This document shows positions 4,041 through 62,661 of a stretch of 64,000 nucleotides of DNA, piece after piece. Position 1 is the first letter of the stretch, and the number at the start of each line of letters is the position of its first letter. Position numbers and translations under genes: made by a program. The DNA is taken from IMG/VR virus record IMGVR_UViG_3300022935_000005, positions 186,001-250,000 of that record, one strand, 5' to 3'. Under the pieces are notes generated by a model, which made no database searches, had not been told where the DNA came from, and was given only the letters and a program-made list of their open reading frames with translations.

Positions 4041-4182
4041 GAATATTTCTGTGCTATTCCATATTTAATAGGGGAAAAGGTTTAATAATTTGGCTTCTAC
4101 TATACTAAGATCTTATCATGGTTTATACGACACAAGAAGCCCAAAAGAGAACAGCTTACAAAACTTAAGTGAGGAAGAACAT

Positions 4183-5265
4183 ATGTCAAGTAACAACAAA
4201 GATGATCAATACATTAACACACCTCAGGCGGATGACGATTTTGATTTCGTCATGGCATACGATGATGATCCTGCGGAGGGAGATGAAAGGCTCTTGCCTG
4301 AAAACTCTGCACGTTCCGCTATAAGCTGTGGTTTCATCGGAGTCGGGGGCGGAGGTGGAAAGCTTGCTAGCGCCTTTCTTGATGTAGGATTCAATAAGAC
4401 TCTACTAGTTAATACAACAGAGAAAGACCAGCCTGGCGGACTTGATGCAAACCACTTCCTATTAGTACCAGGCGCTGATGGTGTAGGTAAAGATGTCGAG
4501 TTGGGTAAGCAGGTTCTCGGTGAGAATTCAGCCATGGTTGAAGACGCTGTACGAACGCGTATTGGTCAGGTGGATTGGCTTTTCGTACTCGCTGGCGGCG
4601 GCGGAGGTACGGGTTCAGCTTGTCACGAGCTTCATTCTTCTCTATCACGTTATCTCGGGTCGGTAGAAGCTTCTGGCAATGTCGTCTATATAATTTCAAA
4701 GCCGACAGCTCAAGAGCTACTAAATCCAGCTATTAAGAAGAATTACTCTACCCTCATGTCGGATGTTGCCGATCACCCGCATATTGTGATCGACAATGAA
4801 AAACAGCTCCAGCTTCTGCGAGGCAAAGTTGGTATGCTTAATATGTTCCCTGCTGCTAATAAGAACTTTGCTAAGCTCTTTAGTCAAGTTCTCAAGCTTG
4901 CTGACGAGCACACCGAGATCCAGACTTTCGATAGTAAAGACCTAGAGCGTTGTCTAAAAGCTCCTGGTCGAATTGTTATTGGCTCTACGATCATCAAGGA
5001 TGTTAATAGAAATGACCTTGGGTCACTCGTCTATCAAGGATGCTTGCGTTCATCACCTTGCCCGACACCATCTGGTACTGCTACAACGGGTACACTACTT
5101 TTGATCGTCGACGGAAACATGGCTGCAGATCCTGATGTTAGTAGACGACTCGAATCAGCGTTCTCATATGTCGGTGGTAGAGCGGACGTCTTATTCTCGG
5201 GAGTTTATATGAAGGAAGGAATCCCTGGTTTAATTGGTCTAACGATGTTAGGTGGTTTGAAGTAA
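4183..5265 (+). CDS. tubulin/FtsZ-family GTPase (PhuZ-like)
   Basis: IGVGGGGGK, GADGVGKD, signature AGGGGGTGS, IVIDNEK; ATG 4183 follows GAGGAAG RBS. Confidence 0.88.
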   Translation: MSSNNKDDQYINTPQADDDFDFVMAYDDDPAEGDERLLPENSARSAISCGFIGVGGGGGKLASAFLDVGFNKTLLVNTTEKDQPGGLDANHFLLVPGADGVGKDVELGKQVLGENSAMVEDAVRTRIGQVDWLFVLAGGGGGTGSACHELHSSLSRYLGSVEASGNVVYIISKPTAQELLNPAIKKNYSTLMSDVADHPHIVIDNEKQLQLLRGKVGMLNMFPAANKNFAKLFSQVLKLADEHTEIQTFDSKDLERCLKAPGRIVIGSTIIKDVNRNDLGSLVYQGCLRSSPCPTPSGTATTGTLLLIVDGNMAADPDVSRRLESAFSYVGGRADVLFSGVYMKEGIPGLIGLTMLGGLK

Positions 5266-5838
5266 TAGAACTTCTCTAACAAGCTTTCGAAGCCCTGATA
5301 TTTCTTTACTTTCTGTAAGAGATGTCAGGGCTTCCCAATGTTTGGGGCTTATACCCTTCGGTATTCCACCGGCCACGTCCGATATTTGGTCTATCGCATT
5401 TGCGTATTTCTGCTTCTGGCGAGGTGTGGGAGTAGAGCTTAGATTGTGTACCATGTCAGCAAGCTTTACTCTTAGAGCAAGCTGGTTGTTCAATAGCCCA
5501 ACCACATACTCGCTGTAAGGCGCGCCCTTCTCGTGCGTTAACGCTTTCACTGCGTCTATCACAACCTGACCAGCTTGTGGGTCTCGGATCGAACCTCTTA
5601 TAAATTGTTCCATCTCTTCGACACTATCAACAGTCAACCCTGGTGCGTCTTCGATACTATCATGCAAGAGTGCGACCATCTGTGCAGCGTGATCTCTAGG
5701 GTAGAATTTTCTTATTATGTTACGAACTTCTGACGGGTGAGTGAAATAATCTTCGCCTGACCTACGTTTTTGTCCTGTATGTGCCATTCGTGCAGTCGCA
5801 TATACATCTCTGAAGTCATCTCTAGTAAATTGCATCAA
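5248..5838 (-). CDS. HD-domain (p)ppGpp hydrolase-like protein (RelA/SpoT hydrolase, small alarmone hydrolase type)
   Basis: AHTGQKRRSGEDYFTHP, ALLHDSIED, VKLADMVHN; no synthetase domain. Confidence 0.85.
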   Translation of the reverse strand: MMQFTRDDFRDVYATARMAHTGQKRRSGEDYFTHPSEVRNIIRKFYPRDHAAQMVALLHDSIEDAPGLTVDSVEEMEQFIRGSIRDPQAGQVVIDAVKALTHEKGAPYSEYVVGLLNNQLALRVKLADMVHNLSSTPTPRQKQKYANAIDQISDVAGGIPKGISPKHWEALTSLTESKEISGLRKLVREVLLLQTT

Positions 5839-6425
5839 GTTGTCCCTTCGTAGTACCCTTGTACTTGAAACAACTGCTTCTTTATGAAGAGAGCTCCACC
5901 GCTATTACCACTGAAGTCATCGTTCAGCACTATCTCAAGACGTTCGTTATTCGCACCAACAAGTCGTAGTGGGTACCCAGAACGAGAGAACGTCCACCTA
6001 ACCCTAAGGTAGCTATCAACGTTACCATTGCTTGACGGATAAACTTCTGCATCGAAGCACAAGCCGCCCCAGTCTGCATTAGTTTTAATTGGTATACCGT
6101 CGGTGAGTTCTAAGAGCGTTCCAGAATCGTTTTGTATTCTGACTGTTATACCGTTAGTCAGACCGCCGGCGATCCCACCATAAGAGTCTGTATAGAATTC
6201 GTTCTTCCTACCACCTACGAGAACTAACATACGTTCTAGTCTAATAATCTCGCTGGGGCCTGGTTGTATATAGAAGATTTCTGGAGTTACAGAGTAATTG
6301 CCGTTCGCGTTTGATGTCCCTGTACCATCGCCGTCCGTATCTAAATAGCGATATAAGGCAGTTGGGACAGGCCCATACCCGCCTGAGCTCGGTCCGCCAC
6401 CACCGTTAAGATCTGTAAATCCCAT
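5835..6425 (-). CDS. hypothetical, probable virion beta-rich protein
   Basis: Gly/Thr/Asn-rich 196 aa ORF in a minus-strand operon. Confidence 0.45.
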   Translation of the reverse strand: MGFTDLNGGGGPSSGGYGPVPTALYRYLDTDGDGTGTSNANGNYSVTPEIFYIQPGPSEIIRLERMLVLVGGRKNEFYTDSYGGIAGGLTNGITVRIQNDSGTLLELTDGIPIKTNADWGGLCFDAEVYPSSNGNVDSYLRVRWTFSRSGYPLRLVGANNERLEIVLNDDFSGNSGGALFIKKQLFQVQGYYEGTT

Positions 6426-6426: not shown

Positions 6427-6837
6427 TTAGCCGACTCCTGCTGATCCTGAGTAGTTATTTATTAGCATATTCGATTCGATTCCAGTAAGTCCGGCCACAA
6501 CTGAAGCAGTAACTCCAGTCGTCGAATCGCTGAGCAAGAAAACACTGGAGACCCTAAGTTCTCCCTCAAAGCTTTCTTGATTATTCAAGATGAAGTAGTT
6601 GTTGTTCACGACACCTTTGACACCGTTAGCGGAGAACCCTACTCTTAGCGGTACATTTCCGCTCGAGCCGGCGAGGTTATTCGTTACCATTATGAATCTT
6701 GTGATGTTCGGGAATTCTACTTCTATAGGTTCTTCGCTAGAGGCAGGCACGGCCAGAGATGAAGTAACATACGGCACCGCACTAATGGCGTACGAAGACA
6801 CATCACCAAGTCCTCTTTTCGGCCACGAACTGCTCAA
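6427..6837 (-). CDS. hypothetical, probable virion structural protein
   Basis: Ser/Val/Gly-rich; GAGGAGG RBS on the minus strand at about 6844-6850. Confidence 0.5.
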   Translation of the reverse strand: MSSSWPKRGLGDVSSYAISAVPYVTSSLAVPASSEEPIEVEFPNITRFIMVTNNLAGSSGNVPLRVGFSANGVKGVVNNNYFILNNQESFEGELRVSSVFLLSDSTTGVTASVVAGLTGIESNMLINNYSGSAGVG

Positions 6838-6878
6838 CAGGTACCTCCTCTTACAACACTTTTATTAAATATTCTTTG

Positions 6879-7169: not shown

Positions 7170-7509
7170 TGGTGGACCCGTCCGGTACTGCCCCGGAGTC
7201 CAAAACAACATTAGATTAAAGTCATTCACAAGCTTGTCTGGTCATTTCTCCGGCCAGAAGGATATTCACCATAGCTTTTCGCCTCCGTTGTGAAGTGGGA
7301 GGACTGGCGGCTTTTTATTTCTTGGCAGAACCACCTGCTAAAGTCTAAATTGGATAGATGGTTTTAGACAACCACCCGACTAAGCTGCTAGAGCAACGTT
7401 GTCGTAGTGATAATTGTTATTGGCAATTATAATTGTTGAACTTTTAAGGATGTATCTTTCCTGCTTGCACTCAAACCCTCCGTCGCCCTGTCGAAACTAG
7501 TTCGGGCCC
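7170..7509 (-). ncRNA. ssrA: tmRNA (one-piece, about 340 nt), tag ANNNYHYDNVALAA
   Basis: Minus strand begins GGGCCCGAACTAGTTTCGAC and ends GGACTCCGGGGCAGTACCGGACGGGTCCACCA; acceptor stem with G3-U70 pair; tag ORF 7424-7380 ends ALAA-stop. Confidence 0.95.
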
Positions 7510-7594
7510 ATGTTCATTTTAAGTATATTATGTAGAATAAAGTCGTAATACATGAGATATTTAAGATAGCGTGGTATAACAATAGGAGCCGCTT

Positions 7595-8514: not shown

Positions 8515-9258
8515 ATGGAAAAGAAGATTAAGAAAGTGGTGGCGTTTGATTTTGACGACACCTTGGCCGTTACGAACTCACACGTAGGGATAAGGTCTAA
8601 TTTACTCGAGAATGCTTTCACCATTGCATCTCGTCTCGGATTAGATATCGCCTCCCGAGACGAAGACTGGATCTGGGTTAACTCGACCAACTACGAGACT
8701 TTTCTGTCTTTTTCTAGTGTGTCGATATCTGATTTTGAATATGATTATTCAGAAACAATGGCAGTAGATTTAGATTCAGTGTCCCCAATCCCTTCAATGA
8801 TTATACAGTTGAAGGAATATCTCGCAGATCCCGATTGTTTGGTAATAATCTTGACGGCAAGGGCAGGCTACACTGACGTCTGGAGTCCTGTGAATAAGTG
8901 TGTAATTCCCTCCACAAACAGAGAGGGTATCGCTTCGTTCCTTAATTCACAAGGAATTATCATTCCTGATCACCACATCCATACCGTAGGTGATGTAGCT
9001 GCTGAAGGTGGTCTTACATCAGTGGCTAAGGCGAATGTTTTATCTCATTATGCGATCGCCTACCAACCTGAGGAAATCATATTTTATGATGACAGCGAGA
9101 GAAATATCGCTCGCGCGTCCAAGATACACTTGAGAGAAGGTGTAAATTCCAGGATCACGCTAAACTACGTAAAAGACGGTCATGTCGCACGTTCCGTCCA
9201 GAGCAATAAAGGGTTAAAACAGTGGTTGTACCGCATATTTAAGACTATGCTGGAGTAA
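8515..9258 (+). CDS. HAD-superfamily phosphatase
   Basis: VAFDFDDTL, ILTAR, K, FYDDSERN motifs I-IV. Confidence 0.75.
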   Translation: MEKKIKKVVAFDFDDTLAVTNSHVGIRSNLLENAFTIASRLGLDIASRDEDWIWVNSTNYETFLSFSSVSISDFEYDYSETMAVDLDSVSPIPSMIIQLKEYLADPDCLVIILTARAGYTDVWSPVNKCVIPSTNREGIASFLNSQGIIIPDHHIHTVGDVAAEGGLTSVAKANVLSHYAIAYQPEEIIFYDDSERNIARASKIHLREGVNSRITLNYVKDGHVARSVQSNKGLKQWLYRIFKTMLE

Positions 9259-10067
9259 TGCCTGTGAAAGACCTGAGAAAACTAGTTTCCCTGCTTTTAG
9301 AAGAAGGGTACCAAAGCCATACTTTCGAGCCCGTAGTTGGTGATATTGTTGCCAATGATAACCCAAACTGTAAGCATCGAGGATCGATTGGCAGAGTCCT
9401 AACCATCCAAGCTCTGGATAATGACCAGGGAAAGACGGCGTCTTACGAATGCTTAAACTCTGGAGATGAGTGGGAAGAAGGTGATGTTTTAACAAAGACG
9501 CTCGATCAGTTGGTACCTGCTGTCTCAAAAGACTTCGCGTATCATATGACGAATGGTCTAGGCATGACTGAATCGATATATCGCCCCGGTTCCAGAGCTT
9601 TTTTTGACCTCGTAAGAGAGTTTCGAGTTTTGTCTCACAGAGGAGCCTACTCACCCTCCTACTTCGAGTCGTACTATCTTTTTGAGACTGACTTGGGCGA
9701 ATATGGTATGTATGATGGTCACCCGGTACCGCTTGACTGGCCAATGCCAGATGAAGACCTTTTCGAAGCAGAATATAAGGGCCGGGATGTCGACCTGAAT
9801 TCTCCTATGAGATCTTCTGGGCCTAAGAAGTACAAGGTCTACACCAAGAATGATAAGGGTAACGTTATCCAAGTTAACTTTGGAGACGCCAAGGGTGGGT
9901 TATCAGCAAAGATGGACGATGATGATGCCCGAGCGAACTTTGCTTCTCGGCACAATTGTGATAGTAAAGCAAAGGAAGATAAGACCAAGCCAGGCTACTG
10001 GTCCTGTCGGCTGCCCAGGTACTGGAAAGAGCTTGGGTTTAAGAAGAATAGTTATAGATTTTGGTAG
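9258..10067 (+). CDS. multidomain phage protein with leader-like N-terminus
   Basis: KDLRKLVSLLLEE N-terminus; C-terminal KKYKVY..VNFGD..RANFASRHNC..PGYWSCR domain. Confidence 0.6.
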   Translation: MPVKDLRKLVSLLLEEGYQSHTFEPVVGDIVANDNPNCKHRGSIGRVLTIQALDNDQGKTASYECLNSGDEWEEGDVLTKTLDQLVPAVSKDFAYHMTNGLGMTESIYRPGSRAFFDLVREFRVLSHRGAYSPSYFESYYLFETDLGEYGMYDGHPVPLDWPMPDEDLFEAEYKGRDVDLNSPMRSSGPKKYKVYTKNDKGNVIQVNFGDAKGGLSAKMDDDDARANFASRHNCDSKAKEDKTKPGYWSCRLPRYWKELGFKKNSYRFW

Positions 10068-18904: not shown

Positions 18905-18933
18905 CAGGAATACTTAACACTAAAGGTAGTACA

Positions 18934-20412: not shown

Positions 20413-20456
20413 TACAGTTTAACCTGTAATCCTCCACCTGGTCCGCATATTTATTA

Positions 20457-26884: not shown

Positions 26885-27166
26885 GCGCTCATAGCTCAGC
26901 TGGATAGAGCAACGGCCTTTAAGCAATAGGAGCCTCATATTGGAAACAGTATGTTGCGTACACTCTCAAATTCGGGGAAACCTTTAAAATGGCAATCCCG
27001 AGCCAAGCCTCGAAAGAGGAAGGTGTAGAGACTAAACGGGAGTGGCCTAAGTCCCAATGGGATATGGTTGAGAGATAGTCCAGACCACAAACACTTCGGT
27101 GGTAGCGAAAGCTATAGTGGTAAGCTAAGCCGTGGGTCCCAGGTTCGAGTCCTGGTGAGCGCGCCA
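26885..27166 (+). tRNA. tRNA-Arg(UCU) interrupted by a group I intron
   Basis: Exon 1 26885-26919 ends ACGGC-CTT; exon 2 27125-27166 begins CTAA-GCCGT and ends CCA; spliced loop CT-TCT-AA. Confidence 0.9.
26920..27124 (+). mobile_element. group I intron (205 nt, IC3-like, no ORF) in tRNA-Arg
   Basis: Core CAAATTCGGGGAAACC / GGCAATCCCGAGCCAAG / GTAGAGACTA / GATAGTCC; upstream exon U, terminal G; guide UAGGAG pairs with ligated CUU|CUA. Confidence 0.9.
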
Positions 27167-27796: not shown

Positions 27797-27952
27797 ATCA
27801 TCGATATATTTATCAACAACAAAATCGTCATTGGGTGTTTCGGTGACGTTGCAACGCCGCTGGCGCCATAGTACATTATACCTAGTACATGTGAACCCAG
27901 GAGAAACACCCTCCTGGTAGTAACATCATTCCGACATATTCATAACACATAT

Positions 27953-30160: not shown

Positions 30161-30526
30161 GTGTACTATCAAGCTAAGCAGCTAGCAATGAACAATGGTC
30201 GTCCTTACCATCTAGCAGCTATTCTGAGAAGGAATGGTCGAGTCGTTAAGGTCGGCGAAAATACTAATAAGACACACCCACGGTTCAAGCGCCAATATAA
30301 AGACGGTACGTGGGGATCCCATATGCATGCTGAAATGAACGTTCTACGTTTCGCTCAGCCTGGCGATGAGATTGAGGTGATGCGCTTTACCAAGTGTAGT
30401 GATCATCCGACGATGGCAAAGCCTTGTTCCATTTGTGAGTCAGAGATTCGTAAGTCTGGAATCAAGCGTGTCAAGTACACAAACTGGGATGGTGACTGGG
30501 AAGTGCTTGAAGTATCGAATACTTAA
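30161..30526 (+). CDS. zinc-dependent nucleoside/nucleotide deaminase
   Basis: HAE..KPCSIC zinc motif. Confidence 0.75.
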   Translation: MYYQAKQLAMNNGRPYHLAAILRRNGRVVKVGENTNKTHPRFKRQYKDGTWGSHMHAEMNVLRFAQPGDEIEVMRFTKCSDHPTMAKPCSICESEIRKSGIKRVKYTNWDGDWEVLEVSNT

Positions 30527-36759: not shown

Positions 36760-36803
36760 CTTAAAATCCTCCTGGCTTTAGTGTTTAAATATCTTCAACA
36801 ATC

Positions 36804-36832
36804 GTGCAAAACTAAACCACGCTTGATATAAT
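36804..36832 (+). promoter_or_regulatory. sigma70-like promoter, AATCGTGCAA class
   Basis: GTGCAA-17 nt-TATAAT. Confidence 0.65.
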
Positions 36833-36865
36833 ACTTACATCATAGGATTAGAAACAGGAGAAAAA

Positions 36866-39875: not shown

Positions 39876-39938
39876 GGGATAATAAACCTCGTTAACTCAA
39901 TATTTAGATTTGAACACCAACGTGGAGAAGATTGAGAT

Positions 39939-44555: not shown

Positions 44556-44789
44556 ATGGCTAATCAGGAAATTGTTACAGAGTTCGTAGAGAAAGTACTT
44601 GCTTTCGAGTCTGAAAAGCGTGAGCTAGCAGAGGCAGAGAAGGAGCTGTACGCAGATTACAAGGACAAGCTTGACGTAAAGGCTTTCAAGATTGCCCTCC
44701 GGATTGCAAAGATGCGTGCAAAACTAGACTCCTCAGAAGATGCCGAAGTAGATCAAATTCTTGGTGTCGTTTCCACCCGCGTGCCATAA
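44556..44789 (+). CDS. GapR/DUF2312-like small DNA-binding protein
   Basis: FVEKVLAFESEKRELAEAEKELYADYKDKLDVKAFKIALRIAK pattern. Confidence 0.5.
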   Translation: MANQEIVTEFVEKVLAFESEKRELAEAEKELYADYKDKLDVKAFKIALRIAKMRAKLDSSEDAEVDQILGVVSTRVP

Positions 44790-45170
44790 TTAACTGCGAC
44801 TTATTTATCACACTTTTTGGAGTTAATGTCCCATGTTAGATATTAGAAATGATATGTATAAGGTCGGGCTGATTGGTGGAATAGTACTTTTATACGCCGC
44901 CTCAGCCTATAGTTATCTAAGCTCAACCGGTGATCGACAAACGTCTGGTGAATACTTGGCTACGCCTTCGACAGACAAAACGATGATCAGGGTTTTGGAA
45001 ACAGCGCGAGCTCATGGCGATCACAAGATACCTCACAAAAGCCTCCAGTCTGCGAATGTCATTGTACCGGGATCTACTTGCGTTATAACTAGTGAAAATC
45101 TAGACTTCAGTGGCGACTTTGTCGAGGTATCTGCCGACTGTTTTGCCGTGGGAAGCTCACAGGAAGCAGA

Positions 45171-48150: not shown

Positions 48151-48981
48151 ATGAGTAAAGAGAGAAAACACATACTTCACATTCACGTTCCCAAGACAGG
48201 CGGGACTTGGTTCAACAGAGTCATGCACGAGCACCTGGGTACCGCATTTACTAGTGCCGATCACAACGCTGTCGAGTGGGCCGTCGAGGGCACGATGAAG
48301 GTCCCGTTCTGGATCACAAGCGGAGCTGAGCACGTCGCTATAACGCTGCAAGGCATCGATGCCGAGGGTAACCGCGTCCCAAACCTCCTCCGCCCGGAGA
48401 TTTACACGCGAGTCGGCATCTGCCGGAATCCGTTCGAGCTGCTTGTGAGTCACTGGAGCCACGACCACCCCGCTGACCGCGAGCGTGCCGCTCGCTGGGG
48501 CGCGCTGCCAGCCGGCCCGGTCGGTTGGGACTGCACCAACGCGGTTCACGGCATCTCAAGTTTTGACGGCTTCATCAAACGCCTGACAGATCCTGAGTTT
48601 CCCTGGGCTCACGCAACGTTGCAGCAGTCGCTGCACTACCAGTTACTGACGACAAAACGCCCACCCCGGGTCACTGTTGACTATGTGCTGAGGAACGAGC
48701 GGTTGACGGAGGCAACGCGAGAGCTCTTGGGCTTTCTGGGCATTGAACCCAATGAGACCACGCTCGCGAGCGATCGCGCCAGCAACAGCAGCCGCCACCG
48801 AGACTACCGGAGCTACTATACCGACGAGTTGCGCGAGCTTGTGGAGACCCACTATGCCCGAGACCTGGACACGCTTGGGTACGATTTTGACGGGTCAACG
48901 ATCGACGCGGCGTGGTTTGCCATGGACCCTGCTGAAGAGCTGCCCGAGACCGCCATTGACACATATGTGTTAAAGGTGTAA
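48151..48981 (+). CDS. sulfotransferase family 2-like protein
   Basis: LHIHVPKTGGT, CRNPFELLVS, LRNERL, YRSYYTDELRELV..YARDL..GYDF; visibly GC-rich. Confidence 0.8.
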   Translation: MSKERKHILHIHVPKTGGTWFNRVMHEHLGTAFTSADHNAVEWAVEGTMKVPFWITSGAEHVAITLQGIDAEGNRVPNLLRPEIYTRVGICRNPFELLVSHWSHDHPADRERAARWGALPAGPVGWDCTNAVHGISSFDGFIKRLTDPEFPWAHATLQQSLHYQLLTTKRPPRVTVDYVLRNERLTEATRELLGFLGIEPNETTLASDRASNSSRHRDYRSYYTDELRELVETHYARDLDTLGYDFDGSTIDAAWFAMDPAEELPETAIDTYVLKV

Positions 48982-48994
48982 TTGCTCGACAATC

Positions 48995-49024
48995 GTGCAA
49001 AGGTGCACCCACTTAGTGTATAAT
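48995..49024 (+). promoter_or_regulatory. sigma70-like promoter, AATCGTGCAA class
   Basis: GTGCAA-18 nt-TATAAT then ATGTTGGTGGGG hairpin. Confidence 0.65.
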
Positions 49025-49466
49025 ATAGATGTTGGTGGGGCTGATCCCCCAACACTGGAGAGTGCTCATGGACATCATCGTTACCGACAAGATCACCGCC
49101 GTCTGGGGCCGCGATGTTACCGGCGTCAAGTACGTCCTCAACATCATTGAGACCGAAAACCTGACTCTGCCCCGCACCGCCGCCACCGGTCTCACCGGTG
49201 CCGACCTGGGCTGGACTGCCTACCCCACGGCGCGGGTGACCCTCGACCGTCGGGCGCGATGACGCGCTATGATGATACCACCGGGCCTGCGCCGGGCACG
49301 CTTGTCGCTAACTGCAACGAGTTCAGCGCTTGTTACGGGAGTGTTGGCCTTGTCATTGAGGAAAACCGGTCGACGCTCGCCGCTCTCGTTTACTTTTTTG
49401 TTGACCAGAAAATGCGACCTGAACGCTGGGTGTACTGGCGACACTTGTGCGATGTGGAGGATGTAG

Positions 49467-49928
49467 ATGACGCGCAACTCACTTGACTTTTTCTCTGGTC
49501 GATCACAGGATGGGTTTGACCGCTTTGATCCGGATCCCTATGTGACCCAAACCCGGGACCACTTCCTGGCGCTGGTCGGCGGCGAGTTTGATTACTACGG
49601 TGCTGACGGTGCCGAGCATGAGTTCAAGATTGACGGCATTGTCTTCAGGGTCCTTGAGGATCCCCAAGACGGGTACCGAAGCTGCCTGGGCGTGATCGAG
49701 TACAGCCCCGACCAGAGCCGCGGGATCTTCTTCACTCAACCTCTGGCGCGAGTCCGGCTGGAACAGTACGACTTGTACAAGGGCGATGACGTCTACAACG
49801 AGGCGTGTCAAGGGTACCGGTTGGTCGACGTTGATGACGCTCACGTCTGGCTTGAGTTCGGGACTGACAACTACAATGACTACTACCCGATATTCATCTT
49901 CCGGCACTGGGCAAAACCGCCGGCATAG
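49467..49928 (+). CDS. conserved-looking phage hypothetical protein
   Basis: VLEDPQDGYRS..LEFGTDNYNDYYPIF. Confidence 0.55.
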   Translation: MTRNSLDFFSGRSQDGFDRFDPDPYVTQTRDHFLALVGGEFDYYGADGAEHEFKIDGIVFRVLEDPQDGYRSCLGVIEYSPDQSRGIFFTQPLARVRLEQYDLYKGDDVYNEACQGYRLVDVDDAHVWLEFGTDNYNDYYPIFIFRHWAKPPA

Positions 49929-50953
49929 TTTTGAAAATCGTGCAAAACGCACTCGCTCTATGGTATTATAATGATGTTGGTGGGGATTGGACCCCACTCA
50001 CGAAACAAGAGGTGACAATGCGTTGCAACTACAATTGGGTTCAGGTTCGCCGGCGTGGCGAGTGGGTTGACAACGATGAGGGGTATAACTACCGTTACTG
50101 CCCGTGCTGCGCTCGGACCACCGAGCATGATCTCGACAAGTGCGTTCCCTGTGACGACCGGCGCGCCCGCGCCCGGCGGCGCTAGGGGGTGGTGATGAAG
50201 ACTGCTGAGGTTCACGTTTCTTTTGACGGCTCTGACTGGCGCAACCGGTTCACGATGCGGAGCCCGACAGGTCGTGTTGTCACTCTGCATTGCAACGGCA
50301 AGTGGAGCAAGATGAGCCGGGAGCTGCGGCGCCTCGTCAATAAGTACCAGTTCGCAGACGCGGCAGACATTCCCTGGGGTAGTACACGGAAAGAAACTGT
50401 TACTTACGACGTGATGGCTGAGATCCTGAGCCTCAGCAAGGTGTACTAATGGAGCTCAACGTCGGAGACATCGTCACCTGCAACTGCGAGGCGAAGACGT
50501 GGTACCAGGGAATCCCTGGCATCATTGTCGAGATTGACGCGCTCAAGGACGTTCATGTCCTCTATGACAACGGTCGGGTCATTCGCCTTGCCCGTTCTGG
50601 GTTGGTGCTGGCATGAAGGTCGGTGATGTTGTTCTCATGATCGGTGTTCGGGGCATGGGGGTCGAAGTCACAGCTGTTGTGGGAGTCATCATGGCACCCT
50701 GGAAGATTGATGACTGGTGGGAGGTCATGACACCGCATCACGGTATCATTCACTGGCCTGAGAGTCAGATGCAGAGAGTGGAGATGGGCGATGATGAAAC
50801 CCGGTGATCTTGTGTACGATCATGACCTGGATATGATGGGCCTTGTGATCAATGAGTGGGCAAAGGGGGAGAAGTCAACACTGTTCCAGGTCATGTTCAG
50901 CACCAGCTTCCTCACCATCTGCTCAAGTTCGGACCCAAGCACGGAGGTGATTA

Positions 50954-51292
50954 GTGAAAATCAGAACTAGCGCGCTTGACGGCGAGACGCTCGTCATTGA
51001 GATCGAAGAGGGAGACGACAACGAGCTTGTTCGGCTGCTTGACGGACCTCGTCCCAACGGCTTTGCTGTGTTCGGTCCTGAGGTCCCGGCACCTATTGCC
51101 GTCATTGACGGTCGGATCCTCAACACGGGTCTGACACCCGATCATTTGCTTGCCGTCGAGGCTCACGAGCTCGGGCACATCCACGAAAATACGATTGTTG
51201 AGCGCGTTGCAGAACAGTTCGCTGTCGACTTGCTTGAAGAGCTGGGTTTGGTGGAGGCTCGGCAGATCTTGCTCGCGAGGGGTATTGTCTAG
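50954..51292 (+). CDS. small HExxH metallopeptidase-like protein
   Basis: AVEAHELGHI..ERVAEQFA. Confidence 0.55.
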   Translation: MKIRTSALDGETLVIEIEEGDDNELVRLLDGPRPNGFAVFGPEVPAPIAVIDGRILNTGLTPDHLLAVEAHELGHIHENTIVERVAEQFAVDLLEELGLVEARQILLARGIV

Positions 51293-51636
51293 AATGCTCT
51301 CTGTACACACTTACACGATCCGTTAATATTATCCAAGGAGAACAGCAATGCGTATCACAGTACCTTACACAGCCATCTTCCGCAACCCTGATGGGACCTA
51401 TGAGTTCGAATACATCGAGCTCCCACAAGGGATTCGAGCAGCTCGACAGTGGTTGGACACTGACTTGCACTTGAACCTGCAGGGCGATGTTGAAGTCGCG
51501 GCCCTGATCCCTGGAGTTCACACGACAGATCTTCCAAAGAGAATGGAGAAAAACTGCGCGTAACCTGTATAAGAGACTGCTGAGAGTGCTATATTAGATA
51601 TAAGGGCGCGCCCTACTCTTCTTAGGACACTCATCA

Positions 51637-52128
51637 ATGATACTCACACTACAGTTACTTCTCTTTGTGGGAGGGCACGCTATTAGCGCCCTCCTTTTTT
51701 ATTTTTTCCACAGGGTGATCTTTCACGGACCCTTGGCACGCTATCCAGTTTTCAAACAGTGGGCTGCCATTCACACTCGGCATCACGCTCGTCCCGGCGA
51801 ACCCGGAGCATTTTTCTTCACATGGTGGGCGAATGCTGCGATCTGGGCACTCACAGCATCAGCACTTTACGCTGCCCCCGCTTTCGGAGCCGGGATGATC
51901 AGCTTCTTCTGTGTGTATGCCTACAATCACATCTCGGCGCATGCTGGCTCTCCATCACGCCAGTCCCATCACCACCTGAGCCACCACTATGTTGCTCCAA
52001 AGGCGAACTTTTCAGTATCATATCCAGCGCTCGATAAGCTCTTTGGATCATACCACCGCGTAAGCCCGGATGCGTTAGCAGCGAAAATAATAAGAGTTCA
52101 GAGAAGTGAAAAGAAAAAATGTGATTGA
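51637..52128 (+). CDS. fatty acid hydroxylase / sterol desaturase-like membrane protein
   Basis: His boxes HRVIFH, HTRHH, HISAH, HHLSHH; NFSV..DKLFGS. Confidence 0.75.
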   Translation: MILTLQLLLFVGGHAISALLFYFFHRVIFHGPLARYPVFKQWAAIHTRHHARPGEPGAFFFTWWANAAIWALTASALYAAPAFGAGMISFFCVYAYNHISAHAGSPSRQSHHHLSHHYVAPKANFSVSYPALDKLFGSYHRVSPDALAAKIIRVQRSEKKKCD

Positions 52129-52298
52129 AGCCGTGGACTTCCGTTAACTTTGCGCGGAGTCCATTATATTTAAAAGCATGGTGGGATTGCATGGTCTGAG
52201 CCCACCGTAAAATAAAATGAGACTGGACATAAGCACTTGCCTACGCATCCTGTTGAGCCCAGTCAGATTTTCGATGATTTAGACTTAGGAGTTCCAGA

Positions 52299-52526
52299 AT
52301 GAAAATCACAAAGAACCAACTTAGAAGAATTATCCGGGAAGAGCGCGCTAAGCTTGCACGTGGCAGAGCTGTTAACGAACAGTACTCACCGGGTCCCGAG
52401 GAGCGCCGCGCACGGTCCGCGATCGACCAGATTGTCACAGACTTTCTAGAGAGCGATGAGGGTGATCCGGCGTTAATTGCAGAGATTCTGAGAGAGATTG
52501 CCAACGACGTCGACGAAGAAATGTAG
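52299..52526 (+). CDS. MKITK-leader small acidic protein
   Basis: MKITKNQLRRIIREERAKL. Confidence 0.7.
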   Translation: MKITKNQLRRIIREERAKLARGRAVNEQYSPGPEERRARSAIDQIVTDFLESDEGDPALIAEILREIANDVDEEM

Positions 52527-52541
52527 TGGTCTGGGGGCGGC

Positions 52542-53078
52542 ATGAGAATCACAAAGAGACAACTTAGAAGAATTATCCGAGAAGCGATTGATGTTGTTGA
52601 TAGAGACACTGGCGAAGTTATGCGCTTTTCTGATGATAGTAGCGACAGCATGGCAGATCTTCCTGAAAAAGCCTGGCCTGACCTGGTAAAGCGGCTTGGG
52701 TTGAGCCCTAAAGACGTGGGTCTTGATGCTGCCGGTAATCAAGGATTTGAGCTAGACCAGAATGAGTTTATACGCCTTGACAACGAGACTCGTGAAAAAG
52801 CCTACAACCGTAAGATGAAAAAACAGGCAGCTGCCTACAAGGCTGATCGGGAAAGATTGGATATCGACAATCTCCTCGAGAGACTCCGCTATTGGGCACA
52901 AGACGCAGCGTCTGATTACATGGCTGACAATCCAGACACCGACCTGCAGGATATCGCCTATGACCTTGCGGACGCTTGGCAATTCGCGTTCGAAGAAGAT
53001 GAACGAGAAGAACTGTTGTGGCACTTTGACGGTGACCTTAACGACCTTAAGATTTTCGCAGCGGAGAGTATGGGATGA
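52542..53078 (+). CDS. MKITK-leader acidic protein
   Basis: MRITKRQLRRIIREA. Confidence 0.7.
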   Translation: MRITKRQLRRIIREAIDVVDRDTGEVMRFSDDSSDSMADLPEKAWPDLVKRLGLSPKDVGLDAAGNQGFELDQNEFIRLDNETREKAYNRKMKKQAAAYKADRERLDIDNLLERLRYWAQDAASDYMADNPDTDLQDIAYDLADAWQFAFEEDEREELLWHFDGDLNDLKIFAAESMG

Positions 53079-53371
53079 AAATCACAAAACGTCAACTACG
53101 AAGAATCATTAAGGAAGAGAAAGCTCGCATTTTGGCTGAGCAACAACTTGATCCTCAAGTTGCCGCCCAAGCTCTTGCGGAGCTAAAGAACGATGGGTGG
53201 TTTAGTATGATACAAACAGCGGCTACTGACGCAGCTGGTGACCTTGAGCAGCTCAGTGATCAGGTTGATGTCAAGTTAATGGACGCCGGCCTGAACGAGC
53301 TTGCCGTAGATATCAGAAGTGTTGTTGAGCTATTGGACAAGATTAGACAAGCAGCGTACGGTCAGAGGTAA
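53075..53371 (+). CDS. MKITK-leader small acidic protein
   Basis: MKITKRQLRRIIKEEKARILAE. Confidence 0.7.
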   Translation: MKITKRQLRRIIKEEKARILAEQQLDPQVAAQALAELKNDGWFSMIQTAATDAAGDLEQLSDQVDVKLMDAGLNELAVDIRSVVELLDKIRQAAYGQR

Positions 53372-53476
53372 CATGATGAAAAAAAAGCTAATGGAGCTGC
53401 AAAAGCTCGCTAGAGATATTCGCGTGAATGTCCAACCGACAGCTGAGCAATCAGCAAGCAAACGAGGGAGTTTCGA

Positions 53477-53932
53477 ATGAAAATTACAAAGACGCAACTA
53501 AGACAGATTGTTAGAGAAAGCGCAGCGATGGACGATGCTGTTTATGAGGCTGGCTACAAAGACGCGATGCAAGATCGCCCACATGGTGCTAATGCAGATA
53601 TGCGTGATATGGATCCAAGATCATATGACTACGGTTTCGATAAGGGTACCGCTGACCGCATGGACATGCAGCGACCGCTTGGAACCAGAGGGTTTTACGA
53701 AGGTAAGGTGAGAATCAAAAAGAGCGACCTTCAAAGAATCGTCAAGGAAGAGCTTATGTCTGAAGTCCGGACCGACGCGGACCTTGAAATGGACGCTATG
53801 TGGGACGAACTGTTTCAGGCACTAAAGAACAAAAGCTTCGGACTTGACCACGGTCTAGAAAGAGATGAAATTTACATCATGACAGGTGCTGCTGAGGGCA
53901 TCACGGTCAAGATAATGCGAAGAGGTCGATAA
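53477..53932 (+). CDS. protein with two MKITK-type leaders
   Basis: MKITKTQLRQIVRE and internal VRIKKSDLQRIVKEELMSE. Confidence 0.7.
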   Translation: MKITKTQLRQIVRESAAMDDAVYEAGYKDAMQDRPHGANADMRDMDPRSYDYGFDKGTADRMDMQRPLGTRGFYEGKVRIKKSDLQRIVKEELMSEVRTDADLEMDAMWDELFQALKNKSFGLDHGLERDEIYIMTGAAEGITVKIMRRGR

Positions 53933-54159
53933 TGCGTATTGCAAAGTCAGAGCTTAGAAGAATTATTGCAGAAGAGAGAGCAAAGCTTCAAGAACAGCGC
54001 CGCGGCCCAAGCGAAGCGCAAATAGAAGACGCCGTCTCTGGGATCGAGTTTGAGTTAAACAGACTGTATGACCAAGGGATGGATAACGCTGGCTTGCACA
54101 AAGTGCTCGACCAGATTAAGATTGACATTGACCGTGGATTTGTAGGAGAGCCAAGATGA
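53932..54159 (+). CDS. MKITK-leader small protein
   Basis: MRIAKSELRRIIAEERAKLQE. Confidence 0.7.
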   Translation: MRIAKSELRRIIAEERAKLQEQRRGPSEAQIEDAVSGIEFELNRLYDQGMDNAGLHKVLDQIKIDIDRGFVGEPR

Positions 54160-54416
54160 AAATCACAAAGAACCAATTACGAAGAATCATCAAAGAAGAG
54201 CGTGCTAAGCTGCTCAAAGAAGGTGGATATCGTCACCCGAAAACCGGTGAGGATCTGCTTCTTATGTTAAATGACGTCGTCGACAAACTCATGGACGCTG
54301 GTATGGATTTCTACGAGCTTGCTGATGAACTTCGAGGTTTGGCTGATGATGTGGAAAACAGCCAGCCTGAAGAGTCTCCGAAATTTATCGACATGACAGA
54401 TCCAAGGGAGTTGTAA
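54156..54416 (+). CDS. MKITK-leader small acidic protein
   Basis: MKITKNQLRRIIKEERAKLLKE. Confidence 0.7.
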   Translation: MKITKNQLRRIIKEERAKLLKEGGYRHPKTGEDLLLMLNDVVDKLMDAGMDFYELADELRGLADDVENSQPEESPKFIDMTDPREL

Positions 54417-54805
54417 TGAAAATCACGAAGAGCCAACTAAGAAGAATCATTAAGGAAGAGAAGGCGAAGCTGCTCAAAGAGTATGGCGCTATGAACATGG
54501 AAGCCCTGAGCCCGCTGGTTCAGTTTGGACAGGCGTATGTTGGTCTCGGCGATGCAGTTCAGTCACAGCTGATTGATCTTGTCAATGCACACATCGAAGG
54601 ACGCATCGAAGACGCAGTATATGAGATGAATCCAAATGCACTTGACATGGCGTTCCAGAGATTACAGCAACCCTTATCTGCTCTAGCAAGAGCAGGTAGC
54701 GAAGACGCCGAGGAAGTGATGGATGCCATGGAGGCAGCTGCTGAAATATTCGCAGAGGGCGACGCAGAAGTGGACGCCGATGCACGAGCTGCAGGAGATA
54801 TATAA
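54416..54805 (+). CDS. MKITK-leader acidic protein
   Basis: MKITKSQLRRIIKEEKAKLLKE. Confidence 0.7.
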   Translation: MKITKSQLRRIIKEEKAKLLKEYGAMNMEALSPLVQFGQAYVGLGDAVQSQLIDLVNAHIEGRIEDAVYEMNPNALDMAFQRLQQPLSALARAGSEDAEEVMDAMEAAAEIFAEGDAEVDADARAAGDI

Positions 54806-54806
54806 A

Positions 54807-55124
54807 ATGAAAATCACAAAGAACCAACTTAGAAGAATTATCAAAGAAGAGAAGACAAAACTTCTCGTTGAGATGAACGCTGTGGCAGACGCCGAGCGCT
54901 CCCTGGGTTTGTACGCTAACGCATCCACAGTCGACAAGCTGTCTAGCGCCCTACAAAGTCTTTTGATGGAAGTCGAAACAGGTGCGATTGAAGACGGTCT
55001 TGAAGAAGATGAAGCTGAAGACATGGCAGCGAACGCTGGACTCATGGCAGTCGCTAACGCATTCCAGTCAGTGGGTATGATTGCTGAATACGACGCACTA
55101 TACAGATTACTACAGCGGGGTTAA
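54807..55124 (+). CDS. MKITK-leader acidic protein
   Basis: MKITKNQLRRIIKEEKTKLLVE; start moved to ATG 54807 after AGGAG. Confidence 0.7.
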   Translation: MKITKNQLRRIIKEEKTKLLVEMNAVADAERSLGLYANASTVDKLSSALQSLLMEVETGAIEDGLEEDEAEDMAANAGLMAVANAFQSVGMIAEYDALYRLLQRG

Positions 55125-55130
55125 GACAAG

Positions 55131-55424
55131 ATGAAAATCACAAAGAACCAACTGCGAAGAATTATCAAGGAAGAGAAAGCGAAGCTTATGAACGAGCAGT
55201 TCAATTTTGCTGCTGCCGATCAAGAGATGATTAAGTGCGCTACACAGATGGGAGCTCTATTGGCAGGCCGGCCTGACGTTGCCACGGCAGTCCGTGATGC
55301 TCTAGCTGCAGGTCCTTTTAAGAAGGGAGCCGAGGCTCTTTTTAAAGCGTATGAGTCTGCACAAGCTGCTGCCGACACAGAGTACATGAGCTTTGGTGCC
55401 GGATACGATGACGACGATTTTTAG
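55131..55424 (+). CDS. MKITK-leader small protein
   Basis: MKITKNQLRRIIKEEKAKLMNE. Confidence 0.7.
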   Translation: MKITKNQLRRIIKEEKAKLMNEQFNFAAADQEMIKCATQMGALLAGRPDVATAVRDALAAGPFKKGAEALFKAYESAQAAADTEYMSFGAGYDDDDF

Positions 55425-55439
55425 GACTAGGAGAACAAA

Positions 55440-55901
55440 ATGAAAATCACAAAAAGACAATTACTTAGAATAATCAGAGAAGAAAAGGCCCGCATCGCTG
55501 AGCAGACTGTAGGTGTTGAAGACGTTTCTCAGTCAGAGGATGCGTTCGGTGGTGGAGACGTCGAGGAGGAGATCTTTGTCGATGCAGATGCCGATTCTTT
55601 ACTGAACCAGAACGATGATCCCGGTGAGGTTACCGACATCGAGGTCATACCTGAGCGTGTACGTTTGAAGAGACACCTCCGCAAGATTGTGTCAGAAGTT
55701 GCTGGCGGTGGTGGAGCGCTTCCTCCCGTTGATGACCTCGCTACTAAGCTTGCTAGTGTTGGATCTGAAGAAGCTCTTGACTTTATCCAGCGTGTTCTTG
55801 CCGCTATGTCGCGTAAAGCTGGCGCCTCGGCGGCTCCCGCTGAAGATGCAGTGGTAGAACCACCGGCTCCAATGCCCCCGGTTCCTGACGAAGAAGTTTA
55901 A
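55440..55901 (+). CDS. MKITK-leader very acidic protein with second internal motif
   Basis: MKITKRQLLRIIREEKARIAE; internal LKRHLRKIVSE. Confidence 0.7.
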   Translation: MKITKRQLLRIIREEKARIAEQTVGVEDVSQSEDAFGGGDVEEEIFVDADADSLLNQNDDPGEVTDIEVIPERVRLKRHLRKIVSEVAGGGGALPPVDDLATKLASVGSEEALDFIQRVLAAMSRKAGASAAPAEDAVVEPPAPMPPVPDEEV

Positions 55902-61282: not shown

Positions 61283-61374
61283 TGTGGTCCCTTATTTGTA
61301 ACTATACAGAAGAGAGCTATTTGTGTTTACCTAACACTCAAAGGCGTATATTTATATCTGCAAGGAGTTTGACT

Positions 61375-61764
61375 ATGAAAATAACAGAAAGCAACATCAG
61401 AAAGATAATCAGAGAAGAGCTCTCCTCACTTATGGAGCAGGACGAGGCGAAGCCAAAGAAGCTCGATGATCTTGACTTTAAGTCTGATGACCGAATGGAG
61501 TATGAGAGATGGGCTCGTTCTGCTGGTCACGTTTCTCCTGAAGTCCAATCAACTCTAGTTTCGTATTTCTTAAACCAAAATCTACAGAATGCTCATGACT
61601 TGCACCAGAGGCTCTGTGACGAACTCGGTTTAGACCATGATGCAGTGATGGCGGCTATGGAAAACCGACTAGAAAAAGAAGAAGATCCAGCTGCAGAGGA
61701 ATCTGCTCGAGAGCTCGATCTAGCACGCGTCGCAGAAGCAGTATCTGCAATCTCTAAGCTGTAA
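61375..61764 (+). CDS. MKITK-leader acidic protein (isolated copy)
   Basis: MKITESNIRKIIREELSSLMEQ; ATG 61375 after AAGGAG and ATATTTA. Confidence 0.7.
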   Translation: MKITESNIRKIIREELSSLMEQDEAKPKKLDDLDFKSDDRMEYERWARSAGHVSPEVQSTLVSYFLNQNLQNAHDLHQRLCDELGLDHDAVMAAMENRLEKEEDPAAEESARELDLARVAEAVSAISKL

Positions 61765-62661
61765 CATCTCATCAGGTTCCTGAAGAAAGAATACTTATAG
61801 AGTAAGGAACTGGAGATAGCGATGAAAATTGAAGAGCTTGCGCCCGGAATGCTACTCAAGCCGATCCCGGGTTATGTCTGGGTAGAAATACCGTGGAAGG
61901 GCAGCTCTGGTAAAGTGGTCGGGTCGTACATCAAGGTTTGTACCGATAGGTATAACCCTGCTCCAGAAGAGATGGTTCGTTGCGAAAGAGTCTTGTACCT
62001 CGGAGATTCAAGCTTAACAGGTGTTATGCCCACTCCCGGTAAGCAGGTAGTCCTTGCATGGGGATCAAAAATGACGATCGATCCGACGAGCTGGCGTTTC
62101 ATCTGTCAAGTTACCTAAAATTGTACATTGATTGTACAGAAGCATATTTCCCTATAGAATAAATGGTGTACAGTATTACTCGGTGGGAAATATTACTCAG
62201 ATGAAGAATATAGACATTAAACTTAGCTCTGGTGAAGGCGCGATAGTGTTTCGCGGTGAAGGAGTGGAGTTCTATTATCCAGATGGCGGGCCCATCGATC
62301 TTCGAGAAACGTTTGAGTTTTTAACTTTCGCGCTTATGAAGCACGAGTGGTTAGCTGAGTGGTACGAGTATCTCGCATCTGCCGAAGCGCTTAGAGACCT
62401 TGCTGGTGAAAATGATAAGCCGCATCTTAGGTTGATAGTTGGAGGAAAATCAGACGATGAAATTGAGTCATAGCACACAGAGAGCTATCGTTCTTGCTAC
62501 TTTTGTAGCTGGACTTTTAGTTATACTATACCCATTCTTAGAAGGTGTCGTCCTCGCTCCTTCTTCACAAGAGTTTCTTGCAAAACCAACGCAAGCTCCT
62601 GAAGAAAACCCAGCCTTCACCCCATTATATCCTGAGGGCTCTGGAGAGAGGGTTCCAGCAA

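What the first reader, a model, noticed from the sequence alone, without database searches (positions are those of the whole stretch)
4061..61797. Candidate late-promoter motif ATA(T/C)TTA upstream of tag-bearing and structural units
Seen: ATATTTA or ATACTTA lies shortly upstream of transcription-unit starts, on the matching strand. Plus-strand sites are 4061 (tubulin), 7557, 9235, 18910, 20447, 27806, 36831, 39900, 52166 (MKITK array), 61348 and 61791. Minus-strand sites are 6866-6872, 7520-7526 (10 nt before the tmRNA) and 36786-36792 (tail fibre). Known: T4 late promoters are a single -10-type element (TATAAATA) read by a phage sigma factor. Inference: an analogous late promoter, which independently supports the tagged proteins being late/virion products. 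An AT-rich 7-mer also occurs by chance, and I did not count background hits.
Basis: partly seen in the sequence, partly recalled or inferred. Interest (0 to 1): 0.6.

Follow-up and report, generated by a model that had tools for sequence, protein, structure and literature searches.

The report
T4-type late promoter variant ATAnTTA
The short AT-rich word is a real, strand-specific promoter-like signal in an uncultured 281-kb salt-marsh phage: a variant of the single-element late promoter of phage T4. The phage also encodes a distant relative of T4's late sigma factor, so this is a new variant of a known system, not a new kind.

Summary
All 14 sites exist at the stated coordinates. The raw count in the window is only marginal (22 against 14.65 expected). 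Placement is far from chance: 14 of 22 hits lie in the 15.6% of the window that is intergenic (P 5e-7). Genome-wide, the broader word ATAnTTA occurs 44 times on the coding strand of intergenic DNA against 10.3 expected, and 7 times on the other strand.

Sites lie 15-40 nt before start codons and have no -35 element. An ATG follows at exactly 5 nt in 10 of 50 sites, which places the start point 6 nt downstream and the motif at -12 to -6. That is T4's register.

The motif precedes the terminase, portal, capsid operon, adaptor, sheath, tube, tail fibre and baseplate genes, and also the tmRNA. It is conserved in otherwise diverged intergenic DNA of relatives, including cultured Microcystis phage Mel-JY01.

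The genome encodes a gp55-family sigma and shows no detectable phage RNA polymerase.

A separate sigma70-like promoter class precedes clusters of small genes and the phage's SigA-like sigma. Site 36831 overlaps one of these.

Timing and start sites were not measurable here. Verdict: new variant of a known kind.

The parts
2247..2253 (+). An ATG of a 55-aa ORF follows at exactly 5 nt (2259), so a leaderless start is predicted.
4061..4067 (+). ATATTTA upstream of the tubulin-like gene. It lies 22 nt before TTG 4090 or 115 nt before ATG 4183. Predicted start point 4073.
   Evidence: Pfam Tubulin 23.7 bits, below the cut-off
6866..6872 (-). ATATTTA 28 nt before the 136-aa gene 6427-6837 (minus strand). 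Predicted start point 6860.
7520..7526 (-). ATACTTA 10 nt before the 5' end of the tmRNA. Predicted start point 7514, which gives a 5-nt leader.
   Evidence: ATAnnTA lies 12-13 nt before the tmRNA in 3 of 5 relatives
7170..7509 (-). tmRNA gene driven by the 7520-7526 element
   Evidence: Rfam RF00023, 77.8 bits, full-length model; present in 5 of 5 relatives
7557..7563 (+). ATATTTA 31 nt before the 291-aa gene at 7595, divergent from the tmRNA element. The ATATTTA is conserved on this strand in 4 of 5 relatives.
9235..9241 (+). ATATTTA inside the end of the preceding gene and 22 nt before the gene at 9264. An ATG follows at 5 nt, opening a 3-codon mini-ORF.
   Evidence: read directly from the sequence
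10048..10054 (+).
18910..18916 (+). ATACTTA 17 nt before the 212-aa gene at 18934
20447..20453 (+). ATATTTA 30 nt before the gene at 20484 (or 3 nt before TTG 20457)
27806..27812 (+). ATATTTA in the tRNA region, about 10 nt after a tRNA-like 3' end with CCA and 140 nt before tRNA-Asn (27953). Uncertain member.
30519..30525 (+).
36786..36792 (-). ATATTTA 26 nt before the tail-fibre gene 34861-36759 (minus strand). Predicted start point 36780.
   Evidence: tail fibre PHROGs, 4e-13
36831..36837 (+). ATACTTA that overlaps the TATAAT of a sigma70-type promoter (CGTGCAA at 36803, then 17 nt, then TATAAT at 36827). Its class is ambiguous. It precedes the 645-aa cytidylyltransferase-like gene.
39900..39906 (+). 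ATATTTA 32 nt before the 150-aa gene at 39939. The ortholog in a relative (43% identity) has ATAATTA 17 nt upstream in otherwise unrelated flanks.
44786..44792 (+).
52166..52172 (+). ATATTTA 126 nt before the first gene (52299) of the MKITK array 52299-55901. An ATG follows at 5 nt, then a hairpin.
61299..61305 (-).
61348..61354 (+). ATATTTA 20 nt before the 129-aa gene at 61375 (starts MKITES)
61791..61797 (+). ATACTTA 24 nt before the 98-aa gene at 61822

Best explanation
ATAnTTA is the core of a single-element, -35-independent promoter of the T4 late type. Host RNA polymerase core is redirected by a phage-encoded gp55-family sigma factor (genome 54037-54771, 244 aa, outside the window). The factor recognises the motif at about -12 to -6, and transcription starts about 6 nt downstream, usually at a purine. 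These promoters drive the virion genes and a set of other non-early genes, including the tmRNA and PEP carboxykinase. A separate sigma70-like class (an ATCGTGCAAA box, about 15 nt, then TGTGGTATAAT) drives the clusters of small early-type genes. Shown here: the non-random placement, the strand specificity, the missing -35, the association with structural genes, the conservation in relatives and the presence of the sigma gene. Inferred: the start point, the late timing and which sigma reads the motif.
For: Statistics: intergenic + strand 44 against 10.3 expected, - strand 7 against 10.3. ATATTTA is the top non-SD upstream 7-mer. The motif occurs at 3% of genes with an upstream gap under 15 nt and at about 26% of genes with larger gaps.

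Anatomy: no conserved base upstream of the motif and no enriched -35-like word. Position 13 is a purine in 33 of 43 sites. An ATG lies exactly 5 nt after the motif in 10 of 50 sites against about 0.9 expected, and in 5 sites it is the called ORF start (in a sixth it is in frame with it). This puts the motif at -12..-6. In T4, TATAAATA has flipped adenines at -12, -9 and -8 (PMC7892883), so its ATAAATA core has the same register. Five of seven positions are identical.

Genes downstream: portal, head-tail adaptor and sheath, the putative tube gene, the unit with the major head protein and the unit with large terminase, the tail fibre and the baseplate wedge unit.

Conservation: ATAGTTA is invariant before the sheath gene in relatives of 65-80% identity. 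At about 50% identity the same place usually reads ATAnnTA. Across 76 related loci ATAnnTA is the top gapped word upstream of ORFs (50 against 5.9, and 107 against 14.7). The elements before the tmRNA and before gene 39939 are conserved. In Mel-JY01, 11 of 26 + strand ATATTTA lie in the 3.2% intergenic DNA, against 2 of 22 on the - strand.

Sigma: the phrog_234 hit is E 2.5e-6 and unique in the genome, and T4 gp55 hits the same family at 2.9e-69. The sigma-2 domain matches sigmaE region 2 bound to -10 DNA with Z 9.3 and rmsd 2.8 A over 91 residues, and all 50 best entries are sigma factors. T4 Y97, which stacks on A-12, aligns with an invariant Y102. The pocket residues for A-9 and A-8 (H95, T99) are replaced by F and N, which matches the changed -9 and -8 bases. 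T4's C-terminal LDFL clamp-binding motif aligns with an invariant internal LDFL.

Mel-JY01 has this sigma but no homolog of the SigA-like sigma. No phage RNA polymerase was detected.
Against: No start site or time course could be obtained. The metatranscriptomes are kept only as contigs and showed nothing decisive. The pairwise profile comparison with T4 gp55 alone is not significant (E 0.68), so the residue correspondences rest on a weak alignment, although two methods reproduce it. The sigma has a sigma-4-like C-terminal domain that T4 gp55 lacks, yet no -35 element is seen. No gp45 clamp or gp44 loader was found, and gp33 was not found in the two neighbouring genes scanned. A second phage sigma that lacks region 4.2 is an equally plausible reader on mechanistic grounds. 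The motif also precedes non-structural genes, so the label 'late' may really mean 'everything after early'.
Confidence: 0.65

Rival explanations
1. ATAnTTA is a promoter of the same kind, but it is read by the phage's other sigma. This is the SigA/RpoD-like 252-aa protein at genome 184883-185641. It keeps regions 1.2-4.1 and lacks the region 4.2 helix-turn-helix, so it cannot use a -35 element.
For: It matches SigA at 7e-53, and the alignments stop just before region 4.2. Only the first half of Pfam Sigma70_r4 matches. The sequence keeps the melting residues of region 2.3 (the YAVWWIRQ stretch) but changes the -12-reading positions, which fits a motif with no conserved base at -12 in the sigma70 register. 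ATAnT fits A-11...T-7. The gene sits behind a sigma70-like early promoter, as expected for a factor that switches on the next class. It is conserved in 5 of 5 relatives.
Against: Mel-JY01 shows the same motif enrichment before its structural genes. It has no homolog of this sigma at E<=1 in its complete genome, but it does have the gp55-like one. In T4-like phages generally, late promoters of the ATAAATA type go with gp55 (PMC2984593).
Confidence: 0.2
2. The word acts at the RNA level, as an A/U-rich translational enhancer or a processing site in 5' leaders, and is not a promoter.
For: It is strand-specific and lies 15-40 nt before start codons, upstream of the Shine-Dalgarno sequence. An mRNA element would show the same pattern.
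Against: It precedes a non-coding tmRNA at a fixed 10-13 nt in several relatives. It is rare inside tightly packed operons: 3% of genes with a gap under 15 nt. It occurs in back-to-back pairs between divergent genes (7520/7557, 36786/36831, 61299/61348). In five genes the start codon lies only 5 nt after it, which leaves no room for a leader.
Confidence: 0.07
3. It is the AT-rich early promoter of a phiKZ-like jumbo phage, read by a virion-packaged multisubunit RNA polymerase. The tubulin-like gene prompts this idea.
For: In jumbo phages that encode RNA polymerases, the one motif that can be found bioinformatically is an AT-rich element of about 10 nt at -10 of early genes (PMC7598289). The genome is 281 kb and has a weak tubulin-like gene.
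Against: There are no matches to the RNA polymerase beta or beta' Pfam domains. The capsid protein is T4-like, with 2589 T4-like phage records hit. The motif precedes structural genes, not early clusters. A distinct sigma70-like class covers the small-gene clusters.
Confidence: 0.03
4. The sites are chance occurrences of an AT-rich 7-mer in AT-rich spacers.
For: The window-wide count is only 22 against 14.65 expected. Six of the 22 hits are inside genes.
Against: Intergenic GC is 43% against 45% overall. Markov models trained on intergenic DNA expect 10.3 per strand, and 44 are seen on one strand only. The motif is also conserved in relatives.
Confidence: 0.02

Closest known systems
Bacteriophage T4 late promoter (TATAAATA) read by gp55, with gp33 and the gp45 clamp
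   Same: A single -10-type element with no -35. The inferred register is the same (-12..-6). Five of seven core positions are identical (A-12, T-11, A-10, T-7, A-6). It lies upstream of head, tail and packaging genes. A gp55-family sigma is encoded, with a conserved Tyr at the A-12 pocket position and an LDFL motif.
   Different: Position -9 is free and -8 is T instead of A. The leading T of TATAAATA is absent. The sigma is 244 aa and has an extra sigma-4-like domain after the LDFL motif. No gp45 or gp44 was detected, and gp33 was not properly searched. About a fifth of the sites carry an ATG at the predicted start point.
Late promoter NATAAATA of T4-like cyanophages (S-PM2, Syn9)
   Same: A relaxed form of the T4 element found bioinformatically upstream of T4-like late genes in marine phages that lack MotA/AsiA. 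Those phages show the same two-class picture of sigma70-like early promoters plus a late element (PMC2984593).
   Different: The cyanophage core keeps AAA at -10..-8, whereas here it is A-n-T. Cyanophages keep g33 and g45. This clade also has an additional SigA-like sigma.
phiKZ / AR9 jumbo-phage promoters (AT-rich early element; late TATG or AACA-N6-TW)
   Same: The host genome is a jumbo phage. The element is AT-rich and lies near -10. There is a frequent TATG-like sequence at the predicted start.
   Different: Those promoters are read by phage multisubunit RNA polymerases, and none was detected here. The AT-rich element in those phages marks early genes, whereas here it marks structural genes.
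Bacterial sigma70 extended -10 promoters
   Same: The ATAnT part can be laid on A-11..T-7 of TATAAT.
   Different: There is no T-12, no TG extension and no -35, and TA is invariant at the next two positions. The phage's own sigma70-type promoters (TGTGGTATAAT with an upstream CGTGCAA box) form a clearly separate class.

Membership tests
T4-type late transcription (late promoter + gp55 + gp33 + gp45) | Single -10-region element without a conserved -35 | tested here: met
   No information content upstream of the motif in 43 aligned sites, and no enriched 4-6-mer at -40..-9
T4-type late transcription (late promoter + gp55 + gp33 + gp45) | Consensus TATAAATA | tested here: not met
   The core is ATAnTTA. 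Five of seven positions of ATAAATA are shared, and -9 and -8 differ. Distant relatives show ATAnnTA, including ATAAATA
T4-type late transcription (late promoter + gp55 + gp33 + gp45) | Element at about -13..-6 relative to the start site | tested here: inconclusive
   The register -12..-6 is inferred from ATG at +6 in 10 of 50 sites, from 5 leaderless ORF starts and from the purine preference. No measured 5' ends were available
T4-type late transcription (late promoter + gp55 + gp33 + gp45) | Phage-encoded gp55-family sigma | tested here: met
   phrog_234 at E 2.5e-6 and 1.6e-7, the only hit in the genome. T4 gp55 hits the same family at 2.9e-69. The fold matches sigma factors. The comparison with T4 gp55 alone is not significant
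T4-type late transcription (late promoter + gp55 + gp33 + gp45) | Sliding clamp gp45 and loader gp44/62 as activator | tested here: not met
   No match to PF02916, PF09116, T4 gp45 or T4 gp44 in the genome. Divergent or host clamps are not excluded. An LDFL motif is conserved in the sigma
T4-type late transcription (late promoter + gp55 + gp33 + gp45) | Co-activator gp33 | tested here: inconclusive
   The two small genes next to the sigma gene have no PHROG hit. No dedicated gp33 profile was run
T4-type late transcription (late promoter + gp55 + gp33 + gp45) | Drives virion structural genes late in infection | tested here: inconclusive
   The association with structural genes is met. Timing cannot be tested with these tools
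phiKZ-like virion-RNA-polymerase early promoter | Phage-encoded multisubunit RNA polymerase | tested here: not met
   No PF04998 or PF00562 match. The caveat is that phiKZ-type subunits are very divergent
phiKZ-like virion-RNA-polymerase early promoter | Motif upstream of early operons of small genes | tested here: not met
   The motif heads the structural units. The small-gene clusters carry the sigma70-like class instead
Host sigma70 promoter | -35 hexamer or TG extension plus TATAAT | tested here: not met
   Both are absent at ATAnTTA sites and present at the separate class of about 20-25 sites

The most novel reading that the evidence does not exclude
Late transcription in this widespread aquatic phage clade uses a gp55 descendant that kept the clamp-binding-like LDFL peptide internally and gained a sigma-4-like domain. 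The genome has no detectable gp45, gp44 or gp33. Activation would then be clamp-independent or would use the host beta clamp. A sizeable share of late transcripts would start at an AUG (leaderless).
Probability: 0.2. Interest if true: 0.6.

Novelty: new variant of a known kind. Interest (0 to 1): 0.4.

Why it matters
The motif gives a usable promoter model (ATAnTTA or ATAnnTA, with the start 6 nt downstream) for a large uncultured clade of aquatic T4-related phages. The sigma has at least 2453 homologues in metagenomes, and 361 related viral contigs were found through the sheath gene. The model lets transcription units and likely late genes be annotated in genomes where most proteins have no known family.

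The motif also shows how the T4 late element and its sigma have co-varied: positions -9 and -8 changed together with the pocket residues. It raises a testable question about late activation without a phage clamp. A cultured relative, Microcystis phage Mel-JY01, carries the same signal, so experiments are possible.

Tried and rejected
- blastn of 7 kb of the window against cultured phages found nothing.
- Metatranscriptome evidence: four RNA runs from salt marshes hold the region, but only as assembled contigs. One contig begins 14 nt after the predicted start at 39912, and another run's contig crosses the 36760-36865 divergent promoter region. Neither tests a start site.
- A sequence profile of the sigma family against PDB sequences gave no hit, and phmmer of the single protein gave none. 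Foldseek E-values were weak (0.014 and above). The domain-level VIA alignment was clearer.
- The search for a -35 box with variable spacing found nothing.
- A possible third motif (GAATTTAGA..CTTATA) occurs only twice and was dropped.
- My strict hairpin plus T-run scan found too few terminators (18 in the genome) to test a terminator-then-promoter arrangement.
- PHROG scans of ten 200-260-aa proteins found no sliding clamp.
- The 'moraphage' paper (PMC12619734) describes large aquatic T4-related phages with a sigma factor but says nothing about promoters. I could not test whether this genome belongs to that lineage.
- No other genetic code was needed.


Full report
**Source**

The window is bases 186001-250000 of a single 280,913-bp IMG/VR virus record (GC 44.9%, CheckV completeness 92%). 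Near-identical DNA occurs in many salt-marsh metagenomes. blastn found no cultured relative. I made a crude gene map of 367 genes, 91% coding, almost all on the + strand. I also fetched the rest of the genome as loci.

**Observation**

The count in the window is unremarkable: 22 against 14.65 +/- 3.5. The placement is not.
- In the window, 14 of 22 hits lie in the 15.6% intergenic DNA (P 4.7e-7).
- Genome-wide, 40 of 76 hits lie in the 8.9% intergenic DNA.
- Intergenic DNA is hardly more AT-rich than the whole genome (43% against 45% GC).
- Markov models of order 1-3 trained only on intergenic DNA expect 10.3 ATAnTTA per strand. The + strand has 44 and the - strand has 7.
- ATATTTA is the most enriched upstream 7-mer apart from Shine-Dalgarno words. 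ATACTTA, ATAGTTA and ATAATTA follow, so the fourth base is free.
- The motif is rare at genes packed inside operons (3%) and is found at about a quarter of genes with an upstream gap of 15 nt or more.

**Anatomy**

In 43 aligned sites nothing upstream of the motif is conserved, and no -35-like word is enriched. Downstream there is an A at position 8, a T at position 12 and a purine at position 13 in 33 of 43 sites.

An ATG begins exactly 5 nt after the motif in 10 of 50 promoter-like sites, against about 0.9 expected per position. In five of these it is the called ORF start (for example 2247 to 2259), and in a sixth it is in frame with the called start. A leaderless start codon must sit at the 5' end of its mRNA. 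This places the start point 6 nt after the motif and the motif at -12..-6.

The cryo-EM study of the T4 late complex reports flipped adenines at -12, -9 and -8 of TATAAATA (PMC7892883). The T4 core ATAAATA therefore occupies the same -12..-6. Five of seven positions are identical. The difference lies at -9 (free here) and -8 (T here).

**Genes downstream**

By PHROG or Pfam the motif directly precedes:
- the portal, head-tail adaptor and tail sheath genes, and the 162-aa gene after the sheath, taken as the tube by position and by synteny with Mel-JY01;
- the tail fibre gene in the window.

It also heads the units that hold the major head protein, the large terminase and a baseplate wedge protein.

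It further precedes the tmRNA, PEP carboxykinase, a tubulin-like gene (weak Pfam match), and the units that hold all three arrays of proteins starting MKITKxQLRRIIKE.

**A second promoter class**

About 20-25 sites read ATCGTGCAAA, then about 15 nt, then TGTGGTATAAT, often followed by ATG(T/A)TGGTGGGG and a hairpin. They cluster at genome 0.8-6.4 kb and 235-275 kb, in front of runs of small genes. They also precede the large 1204-aa gene at 158 kb and the phage's SigA-like sigma gene. These are sigma70-type extended -10 promoters and are the natural early class.

**Conservation**

The sheath protein finds 361 related viral contigs.
- ATAGTTA is invariant before the sheath gene at 65-80% protein identity. 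At about 50% identity the same place usually reads ATAnnTA.
- Over 76 related loci ATAnnTA is by far the top gapped word upstream of ORFs.
- All five long relatives have the tmRNA. Three have ATAnnTA 12-13 nt before it, and four keep the divergent ATATTTA.
- The cultured Microcystis phage Mel-JY01 is syntenic from terminase to tube. In it, 11 of 26 + strand ATATTTA lie in the 3.2% intergenic DNA against 2 of 22 on the other strand. The extended word ATATTTAT..TATG occurs five times, always intergenic and on the + strand.

**Machinery**

No RNA polymerase beta, beta' or T7-type domains were found. The capsid protein is T4-like. Two sigma factors are encoded outside the window.

1. Genome 54037-54771 (244 aa). 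It is the only genomic hit to phrog_234, which is T4 gp55's family.
 - Its model (pLDDT 80.5) matches sigma factors throughout. The N-terminal domain superposes on sigmaE region 2 bound to -10 DNA (Z 9.3, 2.8 A), and the whole model superposes on two-domain ECF sigmas.
 - hhalign and MAFFT give the same register with T4 gp55. Y97, which contacts A-12, aligns with an invariant Y102. H95 and T99, the pocket residues for A-9 and A-8, become F and N.
 - T4's C-terminal LDFL clamp-binding peptide aligns with an invariant internal LDFL. The pairwise score itself is not significant, so these correspondences are leads.
2. Genome 184883-185641 (252 aa). It is SigA-like (7e-53) but ends before the region 4.2 helix-turn-helix.

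Both are conserved in relatives. Mel-JY01 has only the gp55-like one, which tips the balance towards it as the reader of the motif. No gp45 or gp44 was found, and the two genes beside the sigma gene show no gp33-like hit.

**Not shown**

Start sites and timing were not measured. The RNA runs are held only as contigs and gave no usable ends.

**Left out on instruction**

A group I intron at 27520-27718 is followed by a tRNA-like 3' end.

**Verdict**

The interpretation as a T4-type late promoter is supported. It is a new variant of a known kind and of moderate interest.

Noticed in passing
window 36803-36832, 48994, 49939, 56712, 58938 (CGTGCAA box starts); genome 789-6360, 184798, 252381-255397, 267801, 273800: A second promoter class reads ATCGTGCAAA, about 15 nt, then TGTGGTATAAT (sigma70-like with an extended -10). 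It is often followed by ATG(T/A)TGGTGGGG and a hairpin at the predicted 5' end. It sits before clusters of small genes and before the SigA-like sigma gene.
   Followed up: partly
genome 184883-185641 (359-1117 nt before the window start): A phage-encoded SigA/RpoD-like sigma of 252 aa keeps regions 1.2-4.1 and lacks the region 4.2 helix-turn-helix. It is conserved in 5 of 5 relatives and absent from Mel-JY01.
   Followed up: partly
window 30551-32023 (+): A full-length ATP-dependent phosphoenolpyruvate carboxykinase (Pfam PEPCK_ATP, 2.6e-162). This is an unusual auxiliary metabolic gene for a phage, and ATACTTA precedes it.
   Followed up: no
window 7170-7509 (-): A phage-encoded tmRNA (Rfam 77.8 bits) that ARAGORN did not report. 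It is present in all five long relatives searched.
   Followed up: partly
window 26910-27100 and 27520-27718 (+): Two group I introns lie in the tRNA region. The second is followed by a tRNA-like T-arm and acceptor end with CCA (about 27770-27797), which suggests an intron-split tRNA. The exons were not joined.
   Followed up: no
window 52299-55901; also genome 12976-13980 and 277791-278295: Fourteen small proteins share the N-terminus MKITKxQLRRIIKE. It ends in I-x-E, which resembles the T4 prohead-protease cleavage context and capsid-targeting sequences (from my own knowledge, not tested). Every array lies in a unit headed by ATATTTA.
   Followed up: partly
window 48000-52000: A GC-rich stretch (0.54-0.57 against 0.45 elsewhere) with poorly defined genes. 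It may be a foreign insert.
   Followed up: no
window 4090/4183-5265 (+): The 'tubulin' call rests on a Pfam Tubulin match of 23.7 bits, below the 33-bit cut-off (E 6.7e-5). No chimallin or phiKZ-type RNA polymerase search supports a nucleus-forming lifestyle.
   Followed up: partly
genome 54037-54771, residues 196-203 of the protein: An invariant internal LDFL motif in the gp55-like sigma aligns with T4 gp55's C-terminal sliding-clamp-binding peptide, yet no phage clamp or loader was detected.
   Followed up: partly
window 36866-38803 (+): A 645-aa protein with a C-terminal cytidylyltransferase-like domain. A cytidylyltransferase-like protein of about the same size (639 aa) lies upstream of the terminase gene in Mel-JY01.
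   Followed up: no
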